Source: Schizochytrium sp. TIO01
Lineage: Eukaryota; Protista; Bigyra: Labyrinthulomycetes
Assembly (NCBI GenBank): GCA_004764695.1
Contig: SMSO01000031.1
Location: forward strand, 4,564,436 to 4,628,435
DNA length: 64,000 bases
Direction: 5' to 3'
Both the position numbers and the translations under genes were made by a program. Below are positions 46,869-58,891 of the stretch, piece after piece. Under the pieces are notes generated by a model. It did no database searches. It was not told the DNA's origin and saw only the letters and a list, made by a program, of their open reading frames with translations. The first letter of the stretch is position 1. Each line of letters starts with the position of its first letter.

Positions 46869-47555
46869 AGAAAGGGAAGGGAAGGAAAGTAACAGGCAGG
46901 CAGGCAATCACCAGCACCGGGCCGCGCGCGGCAGAGGACGCAGCGGAGCGGTCGTCAGCTCGATAGAGCGGCACTCAGAGGCAGCGGGAACCTTGCGGAG
47001 GGACTCTGCTGCGGAGCCAGTGAACCAGCGAGCGCTGGGCGCTCCAAGAGGCGTGTGCCTACTCTCTTTTAGTCATTCATTCGCTCATTCACCTCTCCTC
47101 ATCCTTTTCCTCGCTCTTGTCTCTGTGACGCCTCACCAGACCGCGGAGACTTACAGCGTACGCTTGGGCGAATTCTGCTAGGGCGCCTGGGCCTGCACGG
47201 GCCCTCACTGCCCCCGTGGCCTCGCTCTTGGTCTGAGGGAAGTGGGGTCTCCACTGTATTACTTCTCGTGTCAAAAAGGGTCTCTTTTCCTCTTCTTTGC
47301 TTTCTTTCTTTGTGTATCACTACTCTGTACAGAACGAAACCCGAAGACTTAAGAATTAAAGCCTTTCGCACGAACGCAGACCCAAACAACTGTCTTTGCA
47401 CACTCGTCAAGCTAGCGTGGCACTTCTGGGCTTGAAGAAGACCTACTTCGAGTTTAGTTGGGGGAATTCTTTTCCAGATTGAGAAAGGAGAAGATCATTT
47501 TATTAAGCCTCGCTCATTAGATCTTCGTCGTTGGGAGGTTGTTCTGATTGCAGAA

Positions 47556-50500
47556 ATGCAGCATCAGCAGCAGATGGTGAAAAATGAGGCAGGAGCCTGC
47601 TCGGTAGTGCCGGGGACATCAGTGGACTCAATCATCAAAGATTCGAATCTGGAGTTTTGCTTTGACGGAAAATTTAATACTTCGTACCAGCGTAACAATA
47701 AGACTGGAGGCAAGAAGCACCTGCGGTGTTTTCCGTGCTGTGGACCTGATCACAAGAGCTCACGAGCCTGCGAAGTTGCACTTCGCGTTCGTTTCGCCAA
47801 CCCGAACATCTCGCCGCAATCCGACCGCATGTATATTGCTCTTGCTCGTTTCTTGCCCCTTAATGAAGATGGAAAAACTGTCTGCGAAGAAGACCTCACT
47901 GATCGCCTCGGCGACATTGAACTTGGCGCAGATATTACCACAGAACGGATTGCACAATTCGAACGTTCGCCCGATGCCCCCTTTGAACCATTGTACAGTG
48001 CTAAGTTGGTCCAATTCTCCCCCTCTAGTGTACTTTTTGAGTTCAGGGAGCGCGCCTGGCACTATGGCTGGAAAGGCGGCCGCTACAAACAGAGCACAGA
48101 ACATCTTTTGCGCGTCTATGTGCTTGAGGGTTCTATGTCTATGATTAAAAACGGAAAGCTAAATGTCGCATCAAACGAACCCTTGCGTTGCATTGCGAAA
48201 TTGTCGTCTCCTTCGTTCACCGTGTATTCAAGTCGTAGCGCACCCTCAAAGACCGGCAAACAGAAGGAAGCCTTACCTAGCCAGTCACAAGGGATGCATG
48301 GCGGCCCTCAGCAGCACTTCAACACAGCTATCCCTCGCCACGACTCTCATTCCCTTCTTACATCTGCCTCAAGACCTCTGGATGCTTCCTCTATGTCGTA
48401 TCATAACTTTCACCCGGGCCGTGAACAGCCCACAGGGGAACCCAGCGGCTTCTTTGGGTTTGAGGCCAACACTCCTCTGCATCATGCATCCTCCAACGAT
48501 TTCAATATGATGATGTCCAACATGGACCCGCTTCAGCCTACAGAATTTGATACTTTCTACTCCCAACCACAGCTCCCGGACGACCTCGATGTAATCAAGC
48601 GAAGGAGAAAGGCAGACACCTTTGAGTCCACTAATGAAACAGGTTCTGATGGCACCTCTACTGTCCCCTCCTCTAACATGCGCGACCATACTGCGGATTA
48701 CTCATCCTCTTCGCCGTTTGATTCGCCCGACTCTGAGGTTGAGATGTCAGACCACTCGCATGCTTACTCTTATAACAATGATGATCACGTTATTCCTCGT
48801 TCGATGGACTTGAACGAAAAACAAATGGCCAATGTTGACTACTTCCAGTTTAATGGTCAAGCCAACGATTCAGCTCCCATGCCTTCTTCGGCTGCATTTG
48901 GCAGTGCCATCAGACCTAATGATGTAAATATCAAGTCAGAGCCAGGTGTGCAGCATGGATATAATATTCAATCGCAACATGATCATCAATTTCAGCAGCA
49001 GCAACAGCAAGCAGCAGCAGGACACGAAGCTGTGTACACCCCTTTGCACACTCGACCTGAGGCATATTTTGTTCCCGCTGTAGACCCGCCAGCTGCTTCC
49101 GTGTACAAGATGACCAACAATAACAATAACACCAACAGTCAGCATCCGCCGTGCCCAACTGATGACTTTGTAACCAGCAACGGGGCCGAGGTTTCTGATG
49201 ATATATTTTCCCTCTTTATACCCCTCGAGGGAGACGAAGTTGTCGAAGAACCGCGCAACCGAAAACGGAACAACCCCGCCAATGCTGTTTTGCAGAGCTC
49301 TGCTCGACCTTTCCACCGCCACACCTCCAATGGGAGCGCACACGCCATCCTGGCTTCCGTCAATGGCTCCAATAAGTCACTGGGATTGTCCTCTGTGGAC
49401 GGCTCCGCAATCTTGGATAGCTTTGACGGTCTCGATTCCCTTCTCACAAGAGATATCACTATGCTGGATGGTAATGACGGCGTAATGCCATATCCCGACA
49501 TGACACACCACAAAGATGTGTCCAACATGCCAATCCTCTCCTCTGAAGACCTTCACGAAACGGACTACATTATGCAGCGCATGGCCCCGAGTATCATGTT
49601 GCACACGCCTCTCACAAAGGCCGCCCCGAAAATAGCACCAAACACAGCGGAATCCCTCACAAAGGCCGTGGACCTGAAGCCCAGGACTGAGACCCCAAAG
49701 AAAACTCAATCTGAAGAGGAAGAAGAGGAGGAAGAAGACAAGGATGCGGAGTGTGACAGCAAGGTTGTGCAACATCCCTTGTTAGATGTAAATGATGAAG
49801 AACCTGATCAGGAAAATCCGAGCGTGCAAGATGGAAACCGTAGTGTTGATGAGGAGAAGTCTGTCAATTCAGCACGAGGAGGAGATTCTTCTGATGGAGA
49901 TTCTTCCTCTAATGATGGTAGCGACGATGATGAGGGCGCGTGGCGGGCAGAAGCTAACATGGTGGAGGTGAAGCGTGTTCAGATAGAACAGGACGCACGC
50001 ACAGGCGCACTTCCGTTTCCGTCTGCTCCTTCATCATTGCATGTCGAACCTGAGACTGGCCAAGAGTCGGTGCGACTTCACCCGCGTAAGTCCTCGGAAG
50101 AAGAATCCCCGTCGCATACTGTTTCTATCCGACAAACTTCATCTGGAGCAGTCCAAGAGCCACACCACCTTGATGGCATTCCACAAGCCCGGGTCATCTT
50201 AGAGGGAGACGCTGACGACCATGAATCTCACCACTCTCACCGAACAATAGCGGAGCTGACTTATCACATCAAGATCCTCTTCATCAGGTTATGGCAGGAG
50301 AATCCCTTTTTTCTTCTTGCAATTGCGTTTGGTATCGTGATGACCTTTATGTTTATTGGCAGTGCTCTGGTTCACATTCCAATGGAGCCCAAAGATATCC
50401 CTCGCGATTGTGAGCAATACCTGTACGATACCGAGATCGACCCGTACGCGCAGTCTAATAATAACCTTTTCCGAAGTGCAACTGTTGCTGGCGGGGTTTC

Positions 50501-50996
50501 CTTTGAGGATCGTCCTCACCCTATTTTGGATCTTCTCCATGAATTTTACAATGGCCGGCCAGACAACCGTCTGCTTCTTCGCGGCGGCTCCCATCCTTTG
50601 AGAAGGTTTATTGGTCCAGAAGGCGAGGGGCCCTTTCATGGCTTTCACGGTGGTCCACCCGGGCCTCATTTTGGACCTCCGCCACCTCCTGAGCGTGGCC
50701 ATTTTTTTCATGGCCGCAACCTTGGTGCCAACGATCTTGTTACCCAATGTGTGGGTGAAATCAATGTGTATGAGCAGAAAATCGCAGCTCGTGCTCACCA
50801 GCTTCGAAAGAAGGATCGTTTTCAAAACTCTGGGTACGGTTTTCTTGCTCTTTTCGTGTTGTCAGGTGCGGGCGCGCTCTACCGCCACTGGCAATGTCAG
50901 CGTCGGCAGCACCGTCTGCCACAAGCTTCGCAGGAGCTTGAGACTGGCGCTGTAGAGTTGCAAGTGCATTCGAGTCACAACATAGCGACAACCTGA
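47556..50996 (+). CDS. Uncharacterised 1146-aa protein; putative membrane-tethered transcription factor
   Basis: Globular N-terminal domain at aa ~30-228 (YQRNNKTGGKKHLRCFPCC...WHYGW...HLLRVYVL...SSPSFTVYSSR). KRRRK at aa 348-352. Long S/P/Q/acidic low-complexity region. TM1 at aa ~918-939, TM2 at aa ~1093-1109, then a basic tail. The CDS itself is secure; the function is inferred. Confidence 0.8.
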   Translation: MQHQQQMVKNEAGACSVVPGTSVDSIIKDSNLEFCFDGKFNTSYQRNNKTGGKKHLRCFPCCGPDHKSSRACEVALRVRFANPNISPQSDRMYIALARFLPLNEDGKTVCEEDLTDRLGDIELGADITTERIAQFERSPDAPFEPLYSAKLVQFSPSSVLFEFRERAWHYGWKGGRYKQSTEHLLRVYVLEGSMSMIKNGKLNVASNEPLRCIAKLSSPSFTVYSSRSAPSKTGKQKEALPSQSQGMHGGPQQHFNTAIPRHDSHSLLTSASRPLDASSMSYHNFHPGREQPTGEPSGFFGFEANTPLHHASSNDFNMMMSNMDPLQPTEFDTFYSQPQLPDDLDVIKRRRKADTFESTNETGSDGTSTVPSSNMRDHTADYSSSSPFDSPDSEVEMSDHSHAYSYNNDDHVIPRSMDLNEKQMANVDYFQFNGQANDSAPMPSSAAFGSAIRPNDVNIKSEPGVQHGYNIQSQHDHQFQQQQQQAAAGHEAVYTPLHTRPEAYFVPAVDPPAASVYKMTNNNNNTNSQHPPCPTDDFVTSNGAEVSDDIFSLFIPLEGDEVVEEPRNRKRNNPANAVLQSSARPFHRHTSNGSAHAILASVNGSNKSLGLSSVDGSAILDSFDGLDSLLTRDITMLDGNDGVMPYPDMTHHKDVSNMPILSSEDLHETDYIMQRMAPSIMLHTPLTKAAPKIAPNTAESLTKAVDLKPRTETPKKTQSEEEEEEEEDKDAECDSKVVQHPLLDVNDEEPDQENPSVQDGNRSVDEEKSVNSARGGDSSDGDSSSNDGSDDDEGAWRAEANMVEVKRVQIEQDARTGALPFPSAPSSLHVEPETGQESVRLHPRKSSEEESPSHTVSIRQTSSGAVQEPHHLDGIPQARVILEGDADDHESHHSHRTIAELTYHIKILFIRLWQENPFFLLAIAFGIVMTFMFIGSALVHIPMEPKDIPRDCEQYLYDTEIDPYAQSNNNLFRSATVAGGVSFEDRPHPILDLLHEFYNGRPDNRLLLRGGSHPLRRFIGPEGEGPFHGFHGGPPGPHFGPPPPPERGHFFHGRNLGANDLVTQCVGEINVYEQKIAARAHQLRKKDRFQNSGYGFLALFVLSGAGALYRHWQCQRRQHRLPQASQELETGAVELQVHSSHNIATT

Positions 50997-51811
50997 ATAA
51001 TTGATCACCACCCTCCTTGATCTATTTCAACTTTTTATGTGTCTGACTGATTCATTTTTATTGTTTTGCTAGCTTCTTTCTCCCTTACAACCGTTGCTAA
51101 TTGGCCAGATACAGGCTTATCTCGTTGTTGTTCTCCTTTAAATCTCCTTGGTTAGGAAACTCGTTTGTGTCCAACATATATATCCTCAGAATGTCTTGAA
51201 GGTCCCCCTCGTAGATCTAACTAGTAGTATATTCTTGTGCCTTTTGCACCTTTGAAACCTAGTCTGCTTTTTCTGTTTCTGATTGGAAGTATTTTCCCGA
51301 GTTCAATAAGATCAAGAGAGTGAGACTCAAACAGAGCGTGAAGGAGATTGACGTGATTGCAATATCCTTCCACTACAGAACGATGATTTGACACAATTGA
51401 AACAAGTCACTCTCAATACAAAATCGTTTCTAAATGAAAGGGAGCCTGTGATTTTCATTTGCCAAAACTGGAACCCTCATGTGATGGCTAGCAATTTATG
51501 ATTTCTATAGTTAAGATGTTAAATGGAACGCAGCCCTGTGAAAGCTTCTGAAATAAGAAGTGTTGTTTACAAATCTAATCATAGGGTATCTGTTACATCT
51601 AAAAGGCCCTAATAGTCATAGTACCCTCTTCGTACGATATTCTGTAGAATAAATAATAGCGTATTCATCTCTGGTCTCTTTTTACCTGTGGCCAAAAAAC
51701 AATTAGGATTAGGTAGGCTAGTACTAGGTCAATAGAATAAAAGCAAAGGCCGCGGCGAGATCATCACATTCTTCAGGTCACATAGCTGTATTTTGGGAAT
51801 AGGTCAACAGA

Positions 51812-53419
51812 ATGACTCAACAAAGTCCAGGACAAGTTGCTTCACAAATCACTCCAACTGAAGAATGTGGCGGTAACGCAGCTATAGTGCAGAGCTTGGG
51901 AAACTGGCCAACCGCAGATGCGGCTTGCTGGAAATGTAAAGGCTCGGGACGTGTCAAAGGCAAACGCGGCGTTTGGAAACCTTGTATCATGTGCAGAGCA
52001 AAAGAACAAGCGAATAAAGAGGGGCCCGACGCTGATGTTTTAGCTGAGCGGAAAGCTATCCATATTGTTGTTGTTGGCGGTGGTATTGGTGGCTGTGCAG
52101 CATCGATTGCACTTCGCAAACTGGGCTACACTGTGACTCTCCTGGAGAAGGATGTTAGTTTTGCAGAACGCAAGCAAGGATATGGACTCACTATTCAACA
52201 AGGATGGGGTGCTCTCCGCAAACTTGGTCTAGAACCTCCGAAGATGGAAACACCCTCCTATTCACATTTTGCGTTTGACATTAAAGGACGCATTCTGGGT
52301 TACTTTGGATCCGCCTTTTCTGAATGGTTCGCGGCGAAAGAAGACTATAGTCTGAAACGAAAAGGCAAATTTAATGGCGAAGGTCGATTCAATAGTCATG
52401 TTCCTCGGCAGCACTTGCGCTACATGCTTTTACATCCACTTGCGGGGCTAGGTGTGAATGTCGAATGGGACTCGAGGTTTGAAGGTGTAGAAGCAGAGCC
52501 GGATACTAATCTTGTTAAGGTGACATACACAAAAGCAGGCACACCGGAGTCAACTAAGGCCAATTTAGTTGTTGGAGCAGACGGTATCTTTAGTGGGGTT
52601 CGACGTGCTATTTACGGAGCTGAAAACGACAAACTCAACTTTTTAGGATGCGTTGTAATTTTGGGGATTGCTGTCGTGCGACACCCTCTCACGCACGAAC
52701 GCGTATGCGAGACAATGGATGGTGAAACGCGTCTGTATACCATGCCGTTTACAAGTGCTCATGATGAATCGTTTCAGACAGATCCGAGATTGATGGGCCA
52801 GGATTCAATCATGTGGCAACTATCATTTCCAGTGGCCTCTGAAGATGAAGCGAACGCCCTGTGTATAGACAACGAAACCTTAAAGGCAGAAGCCCTCCGT
52901 CGGTGTGGTGCATGGCACGACCCTTTGCCTGCACTGCTCAGTGGGACAGACCTTGATTTACTCTCGGGCCACCCAGTGTATGACCGACCTGAGCTGGATC
53001 CTCAGGATCTAGAGGCTCATCTAATGAAAGCTGGGCTTTTAGGCCGGGTTGCTCTTGTAGGAGACGCAGCTCACCCGATGAGTCCCTTTAAAGGCCAAGG
53101 AGCAAACCAGGCATTGGTAGACGCCGCGTCGCTAGCTAAAGTCTTGGTAGCTTCCCGCTCGGAGAATTTCATTGAGGCTACGCAGAAGTATCATGCTGAC
53201 ATGTGTTCTCGTACAGCTTCTAAAGTAAAGGGCTCGCGTGCCGCTGTTCAACTTTTACACATGCCTGTTCCTGATCCAAATGCTTTGCAAGACCTCTGGG
53301 ATGCTGGTATCACTGCTCAAAACCACCCAGAAGACCTTAATGAGGCTGTAGTGGCGCTGAGGGGTTATGGCCATCACCCGCATGCGCTCCATAGTATCAA
53401 AATTGCTGCTGCAAAGTAA
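51812..53419 (+). CDS. FAD-dependent monooxygenase (group A, zeaxanthin epoxidase/UbiH/salicylate hydroxylase superfamily) with N-terminal Cys4 motif
   Basis: VVGGGIGG (GxGxxG), VGADGIFS (DG motif), LVGDAAHPMSPFKGQGANQA (GD motif). N-terminal CWKCKGSG...CIMC. Confidence 0.9.
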   Translation: MTQQSPGQVASQITPTEECGGNAAIVQSLGNWPTADAACWKCKGSGRVKGKRGVWKPCIMCRAKEQANKEGPDADVLAERKAIHIVVVGGGIGGCAASIALRKLGYTVTLLEKDVSFAERKQGYGLTIQQGWGALRKLGLEPPKMETPSYSHFAFDIKGRILGYFGSAFSEWFAAKEDYSLKRKGKFNGEGRFNSHVPRQHLRYMLLHPLAGLGVNVEWDSRFEGVEAEPDTNLVKVTYTKAGTPESTKANLVVGADGIFSGVRRAIYGAENDKLNFLGCVVILGIAVVRHPLTHERVCETMDGETRLYTMPFTSAHDESFQTDPRLMGQDSIMWQLSFPVASEDEANALCIDNETLKAEALRRCGAWHDPLPALLSGTDLDLLSGHPVYDRPELDPQDLEAHLMKAGLLGRVALVGDAAHPMSPFKGQGANQALVDAASLAKVLVASRSENFIEATQKYHADMCSRTASKVKGSRAAVQLLHMPVPDPNALQDLWDAGITAQNHPEDLNEAVVALRGYGHHPHALHSIKIAAAK

Positions 53420-55910: not shown

Positions 55911-57284
55911 TTATTTTTTTTGTGTTTGTCTCTGTTGATGCTCTATCACAATACTCATCAACCACTCCATAATAGTCCAAGCAATTGGAGACGCCTTGAG
56001 GATTCTATTCCTTGTATCATTATTCACATAAAATTCGCCGATCCATTGATGCAGACGACGTAGTTCGCGAACAGGAACACGAAAATCTTGCATCTGGGTT
56101 CGAAGTTTGTTTGGATTGGCGAATAATGGCCGTAAACCAATCCAGTCGCACTCTTCTATAGGGTGTCCTAGTAATCGGGCCACCTGCTCCCACACGGCAG
56201 CCAGTACTGGAGGAGGTTTTGTTAATGCTCGAAGTTGATGAAAATCTTCTATAGAGAGTTCAGGCGCTGGGCTTTGTACACGAAAAACCCTCCCCTTACG
56301 AGCTCGTTTACCTTGGTCGTCGAGAAGATTATTAGCTTTAGGGCCTTGTAACCTAGAGCCGTTTCCCCCCTTCATTTTAATTTCATTTTCTCGGTCTGCG
56401 AGGAAGTGACCTGGCGCATATGTTCCTCGCATTTGCTTATGCTCCTCCAGCCACGACCTTGTGGGTGGACCTTTTGTCTCTTCGACCATGAGAGTGCTGG
56501 TTGCCACGTTACAGGTTTGCATGTGCAATACTTGGCGTGATACCTGTCGAGAATTGCTATTGTTATCATCTTGAATACTTGGATGTGGCTCAGGCCCCGA
56601 ATGTTCTGCTCGATATGATGAGGAAGAATGAATCGAACTAATTGTCGAGGGCTGATATTTGACATCGGTGGGGTGTTTTTTACGGATATCTAAAGAAGAA
56701 GACATTCTTTGAGATCCATAGATTGACGCAAAGTCAGCGCTGACGGAGATAACGCAAGACCCTGTCGCTTGATAAAAGCATTGTTCAAGAACTTCTTTAG
56801 CACAATCTATAACAACCTTGAAACTTGCTCCTGCAGGGCCCTTTCGAAACCTTGAGCATCCCTCATCCCATACAGATACTATTACAACTACATTGTAAAT
56901 ATCCCACCTTCTGAGCAAGTGCAAAAGTTTTTCTCCACCACCAACATAATCGCTATCGTTGCAATCCTCTTCAACAACCGGGTTATTGGTGCTTTGCTCG
57001 TCTAGCTGGCTCCGAGAAGGATCGGGAAAACACTCATTAGAAGCAAAGGTAGCAACTCGAAAAGCTGAAGGCCAGCAAGTAACATCACACCATTGCGATT
57101 CATTTTGTAGCGAAGAAATCACGTGCAAGACATCCCCACCACGTGAGACTGGGGCTACATGAGCTTGTAATCTTCGATTACCAGGAAGACTTCTAATTGG
57201 TCCATGTGTAACCTCGAGGTCAAATGTCATATTTACAGGTTCATGGATTTGTCTTGCAAGTTCTTTCTCAGCGTCAATATCCAT
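55911..57284 (-). CDS. IMPACT/UPF0029-like domain protein with a C-terminal dynein microtubule-binding-domain-like module
   Basis: First in-frame ATG is at 57284 (AAGATGG context; 457 aa). N-terminal part: RLQAHVAPV...AFRV...DCNDSDYVGGGEKLLHLL..WDIYNVVVIVSVW...FKVVIDCAKEVL. C-terminal part: LSIEDFHQLRALTKPPPVL..V.E.V..LLG...DW...R.LF.....KAS.IA..I.EW. Confidence 0.7.
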   Translation of the reverse strand: MDIDAEKELARQIHEPVNMTFDLEVTHGPIRSLPGNRRLQAHVAPVSRGGDVLHVISSLQNESQWCDVTCWPSAFRVATFASNECFPDPSRSQLDEQSTNNPVVEEDCNDSDYVGGGEKLLHLLRRWDIYNVVVIVSVWDEGCSRFRKGPAGASFKVVIDCAKEVLEQCFYQATGSCVISVSADFASIYGSQRMSSSLDIRKKHPTDVKYQPSTISSIHSSSSYRAEHSGPEPHPSIQDDNNSNSRQVSRQVLHMQTCNVATSTLMVEETKGPPTRSWLEEHKQMRGTYAPGHFLADRENEIKMKGGNGSRLQGPKANNLLDDQGKRARKGRVFRVQSPAPELSIEDFHQLRALTKPPPVLAAVWEQVARLLGHPIEECDWIGLRPLFANPNKLRTQMQDFRVPVRELRRLHQWIGEFYVNNDTRNRILKASPIAWTIMEWLMSIVIEHQQRQTQKK

Positions 57285-58891
57285 CTTGCTTATCTCGATT
57301 ACGCGTTGCCTTTTCAGATTTTGCAAAAGCTTAAGCACAGCGATGAACTCTTCAACAAGTTCGAAATACCATTCCACGAGTCCTACGTCGGAGCTCCTGA
57401 GGAGTCATAAGCACTAGCTACATACAGCGTCTTCCAATGTGAAACCCTTTCAATATGTAGAGCATTCATCTTTATCCCTAGACTCATACTCAGCTTCTTC
57501 CAGGCACCATCTATGTTCTCAAGCGCTGCTCAGAGGCTCACCAACGGTACAGTACACACCAATGGTCAAACGAGACTTGTGTACTCAGCAGAAAATCTTT
57601 GTGACATCACTACTGGTTGCTGACAATAATGGTATGTTCTTTCGTTGCGTCCTTTTTTGGAGTTACTTACTCGTTGCTTGCTAGCGAAGCATGGGGGCTA
57701 TGTTTTAATGACTGCTTCTGAGAGGGGGGCGAAACCATCACATTGGCATTGGGTGGCCAAATGAATAAGATATCTTTCGCAGCATGTAATGCATATAGCT
57801 TGGCTAGCTAGACAACTAGTAATACCTAGCTAGTACTACTAATAATAGTACTGAGGAGTCATGTCCTTGTCTACAGAAGGTGGTGCAAGTAGCCAAATAG
57901 TACAAATGCTATCAGGCCCTCTGAGAATCAGTGAGCTGGCTTTGAAATTAGATCAGCCACGCCTCTTCAACAGCAAAGAACGTGGACACCAAGATCAACA
58001 CCATCTTTAGCAACACACTTCATCGCTAAGGCCTGCGCTGTCAATTCATGGCATCATCCCATCTCCACTGCTAACCTCCTGCTACCCCAAACTCTACCTC
58101 TCCCCTTCCTCTGGAGTACATAGGCTTAGGGCTTCTAGCCTCCAGAGGGTAGTAAGGTGCCGTCAGCGTTAACTATAGCACCGCCGCTCCACTATACGCG
58201 CCTAAATCACAGTTATGATAAGAGTTTGATATCCGCCGATAGGATCATGCCAGCCGCAAGATCGCAAGATCGATCATGGTGAAGAATCCGCAACTTGGAG
58301 CGCATTGCGGAGAACTTGGAGGATAAAATCGCGTGCAACTGCCTGGTAGGATGGTGTCAGCAGCCGAACAGTCGAATACGCACTAATCCACCACGTGGCA
58401 GCCATTATTGCTCCCCCTACTTCGTGCCCATGTTTCTCATAAATCCTATCTCCCGCTTACTCCTCTTCTCGTCGCCGCCACCATCACCTTCCCGTGAATA
58501 TAACTGCAGGACCCCTTTGCTACCACCCTAGATCCGCGTCTTCCAGGGGTCCCAAAGTTACGTGCCCAGACCTTCCCGCACCCTACAGTAAACTCTATAT
58601 GTGCATTAAAACTCACCTTCACCACGGCACCCTCCGCCCTAGGGTTAGGGCTTTCCCCAGCGCCATCGGTGGTGCCACTATACACAGACCCCTCTTGTAT
58701 TGATGCGAGTATATACATTCAATACACCATGTTTTTTGCTAAGGGATTTTAGAAAATAAACGACCAAGTGCGAACGTGTATTCTTCGTAAGATTATATTA
58801 TCCTTTGTCTTGTACAGAGAGGGGCCAGGACGCAGAAGGAGCGGCGCAGGACGAGACAGACTCTTAAGGCCACGCGTGGAGGCGAGGCAAG

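What the first reader, a model, noticed from the sequence alone, without database searches (positions are those of the whole stretch)
47556..50996. Candidate SREBP/ATF6-like membrane-tethered transcription factor with an unrelated DNA-binding domain
Seen: no signal peptide; a compact N-terminal domain; basic clusters KRRRK (48597-48611) and RNRKR; ~690 aa of Q/S/P/acidic disorder; TM1 (50307-50372) preceded by helix-breaking NP; a ~150-aa loop bracketed by a Cys pair (C952, C1065); TM2 (50832-50882); and a short basic tail. This predicts a hairpin topology with both termini cytosolic. The loop contains R-L-L-L (50568-50579) and two weaker sites (RRFI, RNL). Established: site-1 protease cuts R-x-hydrophobic-L in the lumenal parts of SREBP (RSVL) and ATF6 (RHLL), and site-2 protease then releases the N-terminal factor. 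Inference: a convergently built regulated-intramembrane-proteolysis circuit linking ER/membrane state to transcription in a probably oleaginous protist, using neither bHLH nor bZIP.
Basis: partly seen in the sequence, partly recalled or inferred. Interest (0 to 1): 0.85.

Follow-up and report, generated by a model that had tools for sequence, protein, structure and literature searches.

The report
Membrane-anchored member of putative transcription-factor family
A thraustochytrid gene joins a basic, zinc-type beta-sandwich domain that looks like the DNA-binding domains of NF-kB, velvet and p53 to a two-helix membrane anchor, so it may be a new membrane-tethered transcription factor, but the proposed SREBP-style site-1/site-2 cleavage is not supported.

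Summary
Window 47556-50996 (+) is an intact 1146-aa ORF, apparently transcribed unspliced, with every feature at the stated coordinates.

- **Organism:** a thraustochytrid; the best named relative is a Hondaea fermentalgiana hypothetical protein.
- **N-terminal domain (aa ~30-232):** it belongs to a large family absent from our Pfam copy, with 407 representative clusters and at least 14 copies in this genome. The family is basic and has a near-invariant C-x3-C-x3-H-x5-C motif. Its AF2 model (pLDDT 82) matches mostly velvet, Rel/NFAT, STAT, T-box, Runt, NDT80 and p53 DNA-binding domains, at modest scores (Z 5-6.7).
- **Membrane anchor:** only this orthogroup has TM1, a Cys-bracketed loop and TM2. 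The 12 paralogs read in full have no TM segment, and at least six of them end in a conserved soluble module instead.
- **Against SREBP-type cleavage:**
  - RLLL lies in an insertion absent from every ortholog and is no rarer than chance.
  - No S1P-type subtilase was found.
  - The invariant Cys pair encloses the loop.
- **Proteases present:** S2P-family M50, rhomboid and SPP genes.

Best reading: a latent membrane-anchored transcription factor whose release mechanism is unknown. Rivals are an uncleaved inner-nuclear-membrane DNA-binding protein and a non-DNA-binding module.

The parts
46907..51071 (+). Approximate transcript extent, unspliced. The 649-nt 5' leader has no ATG.
   Evidence: Contigs of runs X4, X9 and X17 (three studies) begin at 46907-46930 and end at 51008-51071 with no joints. 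Zero ATG in 46907-47555.
47556..50996 (+). ORF of 1146 aa including the stop codon.
   Evidence: A near-identical protein, P0001, is present in public assemblies.
47643..48251 (+). N-terminal all-beta domain (aa ~30-232). It is basic (net +6) and belongs to the 'YQRNNK...LRCFP / GWHYGW / HxLRVYV' family.
   Evidence: 407 representative hits; alignment A1; AF2 pLDDT 82, pTM 0.78; fold matches to velvet, Rel, STAT, T-box, Runt, NDT80 and p53; charge.
47727..47771 (+). Near-invariant C58-x3-C62-x3-H66-x5-C72 motif, inferred to bind zinc.
   Evidence: At least 90% conserved columns in A1. Metal binding is inferred, not tested.
48252..50246 (+). Acidic, low-complexity linker with short islands conserved with Hondaea (aa 288-311, 323-383, 533-561, 578-601).
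48597..48611 (+). KRRRK, an NLS-like cluster. It is conserved as KRRR in Hondaea and KRQR in P0004.
49254..49268 (+). RNRKR basic cluster, not conserved in orthologs.
50247..50300 (+). Juxtamembrane helix (aa 898-915) just before TM1, conserved with Hondaea.
   Evidence: Predicted helix 19-36 of model m4e2b3330a399; conserved block 882-912.
50307..50372 (+). TM1 (aa 918-939).
   Evidence: Kyte-Doolittle 2.36; present in all five orthologs.
50373..50831 (+). Loop between the TM segments, with invariant P942, C952 and C1065. Its middle is variable in length (roughly 30-110 aa between the two cysteines in orthologs) and predicted disordered.
50568..50579 (+). RLLL, the proposed S1P site. It lies in an insertion specific to this species.
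   Evidence: gap in all four orthologs; chance level.
50727..50831 (+). Basic helix, inferred amphipathic, carrying C1065 (motif C-x-E-E-I in orthologs) and running into TM2.
50832..50882 (+). TM2 (aa 1093-1109), weakly hydrophobic here but conserved.
50883..50993 (+). Cytosolic tail of 37 aa. It has a basic start (RHWQCQRRQHR) and the motif A-V-E-L-Q (50949-50963), shared as [AVS][VI]EL[TQV] with three orthologs.

Best explanation
The gene encodes the only membrane-anchored member, in this genome, of a large family built around a basic Cys/His-containing beta-sandwich domain. The family is found in labyrinthulomycetes and saprolegnian oomycetes, and probably more widely. The domain's fold class is that of Rel, velvet, STAT, T-box, Runt, NDT80 and p53 DNA-binding domains. 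The first ~900 residues (domain, conserved KRRR nuclear-localisation-like motif, strongly acidic disordered region) face the cytosol. A C-terminal helical hairpin holds them on an endomembrane, most likely the ER. The hairpin's lumenal loop is closed by an invariant cysteine pair. I read it as a latent transcription factor kept out of action by its anchor and freed by proteolysis at or near TM1. The likely route is an intramembrane protease (S2P-family M50, rhomboid or SPP, all encoded) or ubiquitin/proteasome-type processing. It is not an S1P cut at RLLL. Shown: ORF, apparent transcript, family, fold class, conserved architecture, single origin of the anchor. Inferred: DNA binding, zinc site, topology, disulfide, ER location, cleavage.
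For: Orthologs P0002, P0003, P0004 and P0009 all have domain, disordered linker, TM1, Cys-bracketed loop and TM2. P0001-P0004 form one clade (support 98) with P0009 nearby. Twelve own-genome paralogs have no TM segment. The family has 407 representative clusters, and the domain is N-terminal in 118 of 151. Domain net charge averages +9.6 and is positive in 98% of members, while this protein's linker is -61. AF2 gives pLDDT 82. Foldseek's top hits are VosA, VelB and VeA velvet domains (E 1.4e-4). In VIA-align the top 17 of a 995-chain second look are all Ig-fold transcription-factor DNA-binding domains, Z 5.3-6.7. The language-model search also lists LAG1, P53 and NDT80 clusters. One family member carries three Myb repeats and a sub-threshold AP2 match. 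KRRR is conserved. An M50 gene with HEYGH and LDG, eight rhomboid matches and two SPP matches are present.
Against: There is no sequence-level link to any known DNA-binding family. Structural Z scores are below 8, which the tool rates as common for unrelated beta-sandwiches. No binding, localisation or cleavage data exist. No conserved cleavage motif was found. NP before TM1 is conserved only in Hondaea. TM2 is marginal here. The C-terminal model has low confidence (pLDDT 60). The Myb/AP2 fusion may be a gene-model artefact.
Confidence: 0.42

Rival explanations
1. An uncleaved inner-nuclear-membrane protein. The NLS plus a long unfolded linker carries the hairpin protein through the pore membrane, as established for yeast Heh1/Heh2. 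The N-domain then binds DNA or chromatin at the nuclear rim, in the way of LEM2, MAN1 and Src1, and no proteolysis is needed.
For: The order of parts is the same as in Heh2/MAN1: N-terminal nucleic-acid-binding-like domain, conserved KRRR, a disordered linker of ~670 aa, TM1, lumenal loop, TM2 and a short tail. No conserved cleavage site was found.
Against: No LEM/HeH or MSC domain is present. The strongly acidic linker looks more like an activation region. The resemblance is recalled from the literature, not tested here.
Confidence: 0.22
2. The N-domain does not bind DNA. It is a cytosolic Ig-like protein- or ligand-binding module, and the protein is a membrane scaffold, tether or receptor unrelated to transcription.
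For: Z 5-6.7 is within the range the tool reports for unrelated sandwiches, and complement MG, cytokine-receptor and CBM domains also appear. No sequence homology to any known DNA-binding family was found.
Against: The domain is basic across the family, usually N-terminal, and in a minority of members followed by Arg runs (39 of 166 matched proteins; RRR in the A1 consensus). In this protein it is followed by an acidic tail. DNA-binding domains fill the top ranks in three structure passes. NLS-like motif.
Confidence: 0.25
3. One reading: an S1P cut at R1005-L-L-L in the lumenal loop, followed by an S2P cut in TM1, as for SREBP and ATF6.
For: Hairpin topology, type-II orientation of TM1, NP at the TM1 start in this species and Hondaea, and an active-looking M50 protease.
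Against: RLLL lies in an insertion absent from all orthologs and is at chance level. No MBTPS1-type domains were found. The 16 S8 matches comprise one TPPII and 15 others; eight of those were scanned and seven carry a PA domain. The invariant Cys pair brackets the site, so a cut would not separate the halves if they are disulfide-bonded. The tail of 37 aa leaves no room for a SCAP-binding-type domain.
Confidence: 0.05

Closest known systems
SREBP (Sre1/SrbA in fungi)
   Same: Cytosolic N-terminal factor, two-TM hairpin and lumenal loop. Fungal versions are released without S1P, through the Dsc E3 ligase, a rhomboid and SPP (established knowledge).
   Different: No bHLH-Zip. The loop is long, variable and Cys-bracketed, with no conserved RxxL. 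The tail is 37 aa instead of a regulatory domain of about 500 aa. No sequence similarity.
MYRF (NDT80-type DNA-binding domain, membrane-bound)
   Same: An Ig-fold, p53-like-class DNA-binding domain tethered to the ER membrane. The MYRF DNA-binding domain appears among the structural matches (Z 5.1-5.2). Other NDT80-plus-TM orthogroups were recently proposed (PMC13294678).
   Different: No ICA/tailspike self-cleaving domain. Two TM segments instead of one. No NDT80 Pfam match.
Spt23/Mga2 (yeast)
   Same: An Ig-like-domain transcription factor anchored in the ER by a C-terminal TM segment. It is freed by ubiquitin/proteasome/Cdc48 processing and senses lipid packing, which would be a relevant analogue in an oleaginous organism (established knowledge).
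   Different: No IPT/TIG or ankyrin match. A hairpin rather than a single TM segment. Lipid sensing was not tested.
Velvet and Rel-homology DNA-binding domains
   Same: Best structural matches: VosA, VelB and VeA (Foldseek E 1.4e-4); NF-kB p52 Z 6.7; VeA Z 6.6-6.7; NFAT1 Z 6.4. Like them, this domain has a basic N-terminal strand-loop region.
   Different: About 10% identity and TM-scores of 0.33-0.47. A conserved CCHC motif absent from velvet and Rel. No Pfam match. Homology is unproven.
Heh1/Heh2, LEM2/MAN1 inner-nuclear-membrane proteins
   Same: The order DNA-binding-like domain, NLS, long unfolded linker, two TM segments.
   Different: No LEM/HeH or MSC domains. The C-terminal tail is short.

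Membership tests
SREBP | bHLH-leucine-zipper DNA-binding domain | tested here: not met
   No Pfam match of any kind at E<=1. The N-domain is all-beta.
SREBP | Two-TM hairpin with both ends cytosolic | tested here: inconclusive
   Two hydrophobic helices are conserved in five orthologs. Orientation is inferred from the missing signal peptide and the Cys pair; no topology predictor was available.
SREBP | Conserved lumenal S1P site (RxxL) | tested here: not met
   RLLL falls in an alignment gap in all orthologs and is at chance level.
SREBP | Large C-terminal regulatory domain that binds SCAP | tested here: not met
   Only 37 aa follow TM2.
ATF6/CREB3 type | bZIP domain and a single type-II TM segment with a lumenal sensor domain | tested here: not met
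   No bZIP match. Two TM segments, and the loop is predicted disordered.
S1P/S2P pathway | S1P (MBTPS1) encoded in the genome | tested here: not met
   No MBTP1_N or MBTPS1_3rd match (no eukaryotic positive control). The S8 matches include one TPPII; eight others were scanned and seven carry a PA domain, none with an MBTPS1-type domain or a C-terminal TM segment.
S1P/S2P pathway | S2P-family (M50) protease encoded | tested here: met
   Two M50 matches. The 435-aa ORF has HEYGH and LDG and several TM segments. Orthology to MBTPS2 was not tested.
p53-like / Rel / velvet Ig-fold DNA-binding domains | Shared s-type Ig sandwich fold | tested here: inconclusive
   These families fill the top ranks in three passes, but Z is 5-6.7 and TM-score 0.33-0.47.
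p53-like / Rel / velvet Ig-fold DNA-binding domains | Sequence-family membership (Pfam Velvet, RHD, NDT80, P53 and so on) | tested here: not met
   No Pfam match for the query or 39 relatives. No match to PDB sequences with the family profile.
p53-like / Rel / velvet Ig-fold DNA-binding domains | Sequence-specific DNA binding | not testable with these tools
   Needs EMSA, PBM or DAP-seq.
MYRF | ICA (Peptidase_S74-like) self-cleaving domain | tested here: not met
   No Pfam match.
Pfam 38.1 DG1062_N (PF28397) | Match to the family model | not testable with these tools
   An Atlas cluster with this family scored 0.91, but the local Pfam copy lacks PF28397.
LEM2/MAN1/Heh | LEM/HeH and MSC domains | tested here: not met
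   No Pfam match.

The most novel reading that the evidence does not exclude
The domain defines an unrecognised transcription-factor superfamily, seen so far in labyrinthulomycetes and oomycetes and perhaps wider. It would be a basic, zinc-stabilised Rel/velvet-like Ig fold, usually paired with a conserved C-terminal module of ~270 aa that may bind a ligand. In thraustochytrids one clade exchanged that module for a disulfide-stapled ER hairpin. That would create a membrane-state or redox-gated transcription factor, independent of SREBP, ATF6, MYRF and Mga2, which may control lipid metabolism in an industrial DHA producer.
Probability: 0.3. Interest if true: 0.8.

Novelty: new variant of a known kind. 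Interest (0 to 1): 0.55.

Why it matters
Membrane-bound transcription factors are known from only a few DNA-binding families. Surveys find them by pairing annotated DNA-binding domains with TM segments (PMC13294678), so they cannot see a domain that lacks a family model. This gene pairs an uncharacterised, widely expanded, DNA-binding-like domain with a conserved hairpin anchor in thraustochytrids, which are grown for DHA-rich oil and whose lipid regulation is poorly understood. If the domain binds DNA, it opens a large family of stramenopile regulators. If the anchor gates it, it is a fresh case of convergent membrane-to-nucleus signalling, directly testable in transformable Aurantiochytrium strains.

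Tried and rejected
- **Sequence-family searches on this protein.** Pfam found nothing for the whole protein, the N-domain or the C-terminal part. PDB sequence searches with the single sequence and with the family profile found nothing credible.
- **Sequence-family searches on relatives.** Pfam on 39 relatives gave only scattered single hits. Ten paralogs gave none. Nine long relatives gave only the P0056 Myb/AP2 matches.
- **Profile search of the 5.8-billion-protein set.** It returned only family members with no names or Pfam domains.
- **Homology search with the C-terminal anchor (aa 890-1146).** It found only the protein itself, so the anchor is conserved in architecture and not detectably in sequence.
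- **AF2 of the anchor region.** The model has low confidence (pLDDT 60) and gives helices only.
- **PF28397 (DG1062_N).** It could not be searched because it is not in the local library.
- **Literature searches.** Searches for DG1062, for velvet-like domains in stramenopiles, and for thraustochytrid membrane-bound factors gave nothing on this family.
- **The shared C-terminal module of soluble relatives.** It has no Pfam, PDB or Atlas identity.
- **S1P candidate.** The one large subtilase (1239 aa) proved to be tripeptidyl peptidase II.
- **RNA status of the runs.** The runs are recorded only as 'RNA?'. I infer RNA from contigs ending at the gene's limits.
Full report
**Observation**

Window 47556..50996 (+) holds one uninterrupted ORF of 1146 aa.

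These are KRRRK (aa 348), RNRKR (aa 567), TM1 (aa 918-939), C952, RLLL (aa 1005), RRFI, RNL, C1065, TM2 (aa 1093-1109) and a basic tail.
- TM1 is strongly hydrophobic (Kyte-Doolittle 2.36).
- TM2 is short and marginal in this protein. It is clear in the orthologs and lies inside a continuous predicted helix, aa 1058-1120.
- The linker aa 233-900 has net charge -61.
- Contigs from three studies' probable RNA runs cover about 46907/46930 to 51008/51071 with no joints and stop at the gene's limits. This fits an unspliced mRNA of ~4.1 kb that includes both TM segments. The runs are labelled 'RNA?' only.
- The 649-nt leader contains no ATG, against roughly ten expected by my estimate, so 47556 is the first AUG.

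**Organism and orthologs**

The closest named protein is Hondaea fermentalgiana FCC1311_023692 (P0002, 1153 aa; 76% identity in the N-domain by BLASTP, 72% by phmmer). The window therefore comes from a thraustochytrid.

- P0002, P0003 (654 aa), P0004 (929 aa) and the more distant P0009 (829 aa) all share one layout: N-domain, disordered linker, TM1, Cys-bracketed loop, TM2.
- Invariant across all five are a Pro just after TM1 (P942), C952 and C1065.
- Also shared are a basic helix (inferred amphipathic) that runs from the second Cys (C-x-E-E-I) into TM2, and a tail motif [AVS][VI]EL[TQV] in four of the five.
- The stretch between the two cysteines varies from roughly 30 to 110 aa and is predicted disordered.
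- Identity to Hondaea is 67% in the domain but only 24-26% in the linker and anchor. Conserved islands include the KRRR block and the juxtamembrane helix.

**The N-terminal domain**

Aa ~30-232 has no match in our Pfam copy or among PDB sequences.

- It is nevertheless a large family, with 407 representative clusters at E<=1e-3.
- This genome has at least 14 copies.
- Members occur in saprolegnian oomycetes (Achlya, Thraustotheca) and in MMETSP transcriptomes.
- Near-invariant positions give the motifs YQRNNKxGGxKNLRCFPxCxxxHxxxxxCG, GWHYGW and HxLRVYV, including a C-x3-C-x3-H-x5-C pattern that I infer binds zinc.
- AF2 with 40 sequences gives an all-beta model, pLDDT 82 and pTM 0.78.
- Foldseek ranks the velvet domains of VosA, VelB and VeA first (E 1.4e-4, TM-score 0.33-0.47), followed by TEAD and Kir Ig-like domains, p53 and STAT.
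- A Foldseek-independent VIA-align search ranks NF-kB p52 (Z 6.7), VeA (6.6), RelA, p65, CSL, STAT, TBX5, TonEBP, Runx1, MYRF, Ndt80 and Cep-1.
- In the second look at Foldseek's own matches, the top 17 rows are all DNA-binding Ig-fold factors.
- Each score is modest, and the tool warns that Z below 8 is common. The steady enrichment for one fold class is the evidence, and it shows fold class, not function.
- The language-model search independently lists LAG1, P53 and NDT80 clusters, plus a 'DG1062_N' (PF28397, Pfam 38.1) cluster that I could not test.
- Across the family the domain is basic (mean +9.6, positive in 98% of members) and usually N-terminal (118 of 151). In 39 of 166 matched proteins a run of four or more K/R lies near its C-terminal end.
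- One relative carries three Myb repeats and a sub-threshold AP2 match, though this may be a gene-model fusion.

**Place in the family**

- None of the 12 paralogs read in full from this genome has a TM segment or any Pfam domain.
- Among the 151 proteins held at that point (150 plus P0006), only this orthogroup has the two-TM tail. P0093 and P0106 have a single hydrophobic segment each.
- On a FastTree of 149 domains, P0001-P0004 form a clade (support 98) with P0009 adjacent (83). This fits one acquisition of the anchor.
- Many soluble members, including six paralogs here, instead end in a conserved bipartite module of ~270 aa with no known identity. This orthogroup therefore swapped that module for a membrane hairpin.

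**Test of the SREBP/ATF6-type circuit**

- In the five-way alignment RLLL lies in an insertion present only in this species. The R-x-L-type strings in the orthologs are not aligned with each other.
- A strict R-x-[LIV]-L occurs in 15% of shuffled loops, and the looser consensus in 52%.
- NP at the start of TM1 is kept only in Hondaea.
- The genome gave no match to the MBTPS1-specific domains. There was no eukaryotic positive control for these models, although another family absent from every bacterial and archaeal control genome, SPP, was found by the same route.
- Of the 16 subtilase matches, the largest is TPPII. Eight others were scanned and seven carry a PA domain; none has an MBTPS1-type domain or a C-terminal TM segment.
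- The invariant cysteines bracket the whole loop. If they form a disulfide, a loop cut would not separate the halves (inference).
- The tail is 37 aa, so there is no SCAP-binding-type domain.
- On the other side, intramembrane proteases are available: two M50 genes (one with HEYGH and LDG), eight rhomboid matches and two SPP matches.

**Interpretation**

| Reading | Confidence |
|---|---|
| Latent membrane-anchored transcription factor of a new DNA-binding-like family, released by a route other than S1P | about 0.4 |
| Uncleaved inner-nuclear-membrane DNA-binding protein | about 0.2 |
| N-domain is not a DNA-binding domain | about 0.25 |

- For the second reading, the order of domain, NLS, ~670-aa unfolded linker and two TM segments is the known import signature of Heh1/Heh2 and the layout of LEM2/MAN1.

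Closest analogues by principle are MYRF, Mga2/Spt23 and fungal SREBP. By fold they are velvet and Rel. Membership in any of these families is not supported at sequence level.

My structure searches agree at the level of fold class.

Noticed in passing
Own-genome loci L035:7539-8363 (+), L030:6516-7601 (+), L027:2646-3392 (-), L032:6360-7172 (+), L029:5733-6920 (+); also P0005 aa 441-741: More than 40 soluble members of the same domain family, including six paralogs in this genome, share a conserved C-terminal bipartite module. It has a helical part and a ~150-aa part starting 'SGxW' with invariant G, P, K, S, DG and R positions. It has no Pfam, PDB or Atlas identity. By motif alone it recalls lipocalin/FABP-type barrels and could be a ligand-binding partner of the N-domain.
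   Followed up: partly
P0056 (1331 aa; family domain at aa 600-749): One relative combines the domain with a sub-threshold AP2 match (aa 418-465) and three Myb repeats (from aa 968). It is either a true multi-DNA-binding-domain factor or a fused gene model.
   Followed up: no
window 46907-47555: The 649-nt 5' leader of the transcript has no ATG in any frame, against roughly ten expected by my estimate. This suggests selection against upstream ORFs.
   Followed up: partly
window 51812-53419 (+): The downstream gene is an FAD-dependent monooxygenase (FAD_binding_3, E 9e-24). It has an extra N-terminal stretch of ~80 aa containing CWKC...CIMC, a zinc-ribbon-like pair of CxxC motifs.
   Followed up: partly
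G000:C13, about 697-768 kb (L011, L012, L013, L017, L018, L019 and two more matches): A tandem cluster of at least eight subtilase genes. The three members scanned with Pfam are S8 + PA, and four of the six ORFs read have signal-like N-termini. This is likely a secreted protease expansion typical of an osmotrophic decomposer.
   Followed up: partly
window 49638 and 50170: Strain differences in public contigs. A 3-nt TGA insertion after 50170 appears in all four runs and is in frame. A 17-nt gap at 49638 appears in one run, inside the GAA/Glu-repeat region, and is probably an assembly artefact. P0001 differs from the window protein at a few residues (for example D951E).
   Followed up: no
window 55911-57377 (-): A 488-aa ORF with no Pfam match at E<=0.001. 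Another note of the scan (s1-836879) reads it as IMPACT-like plus a dynein microtubule-binding-domain-like module; I did not examine this.
   Followed up: no
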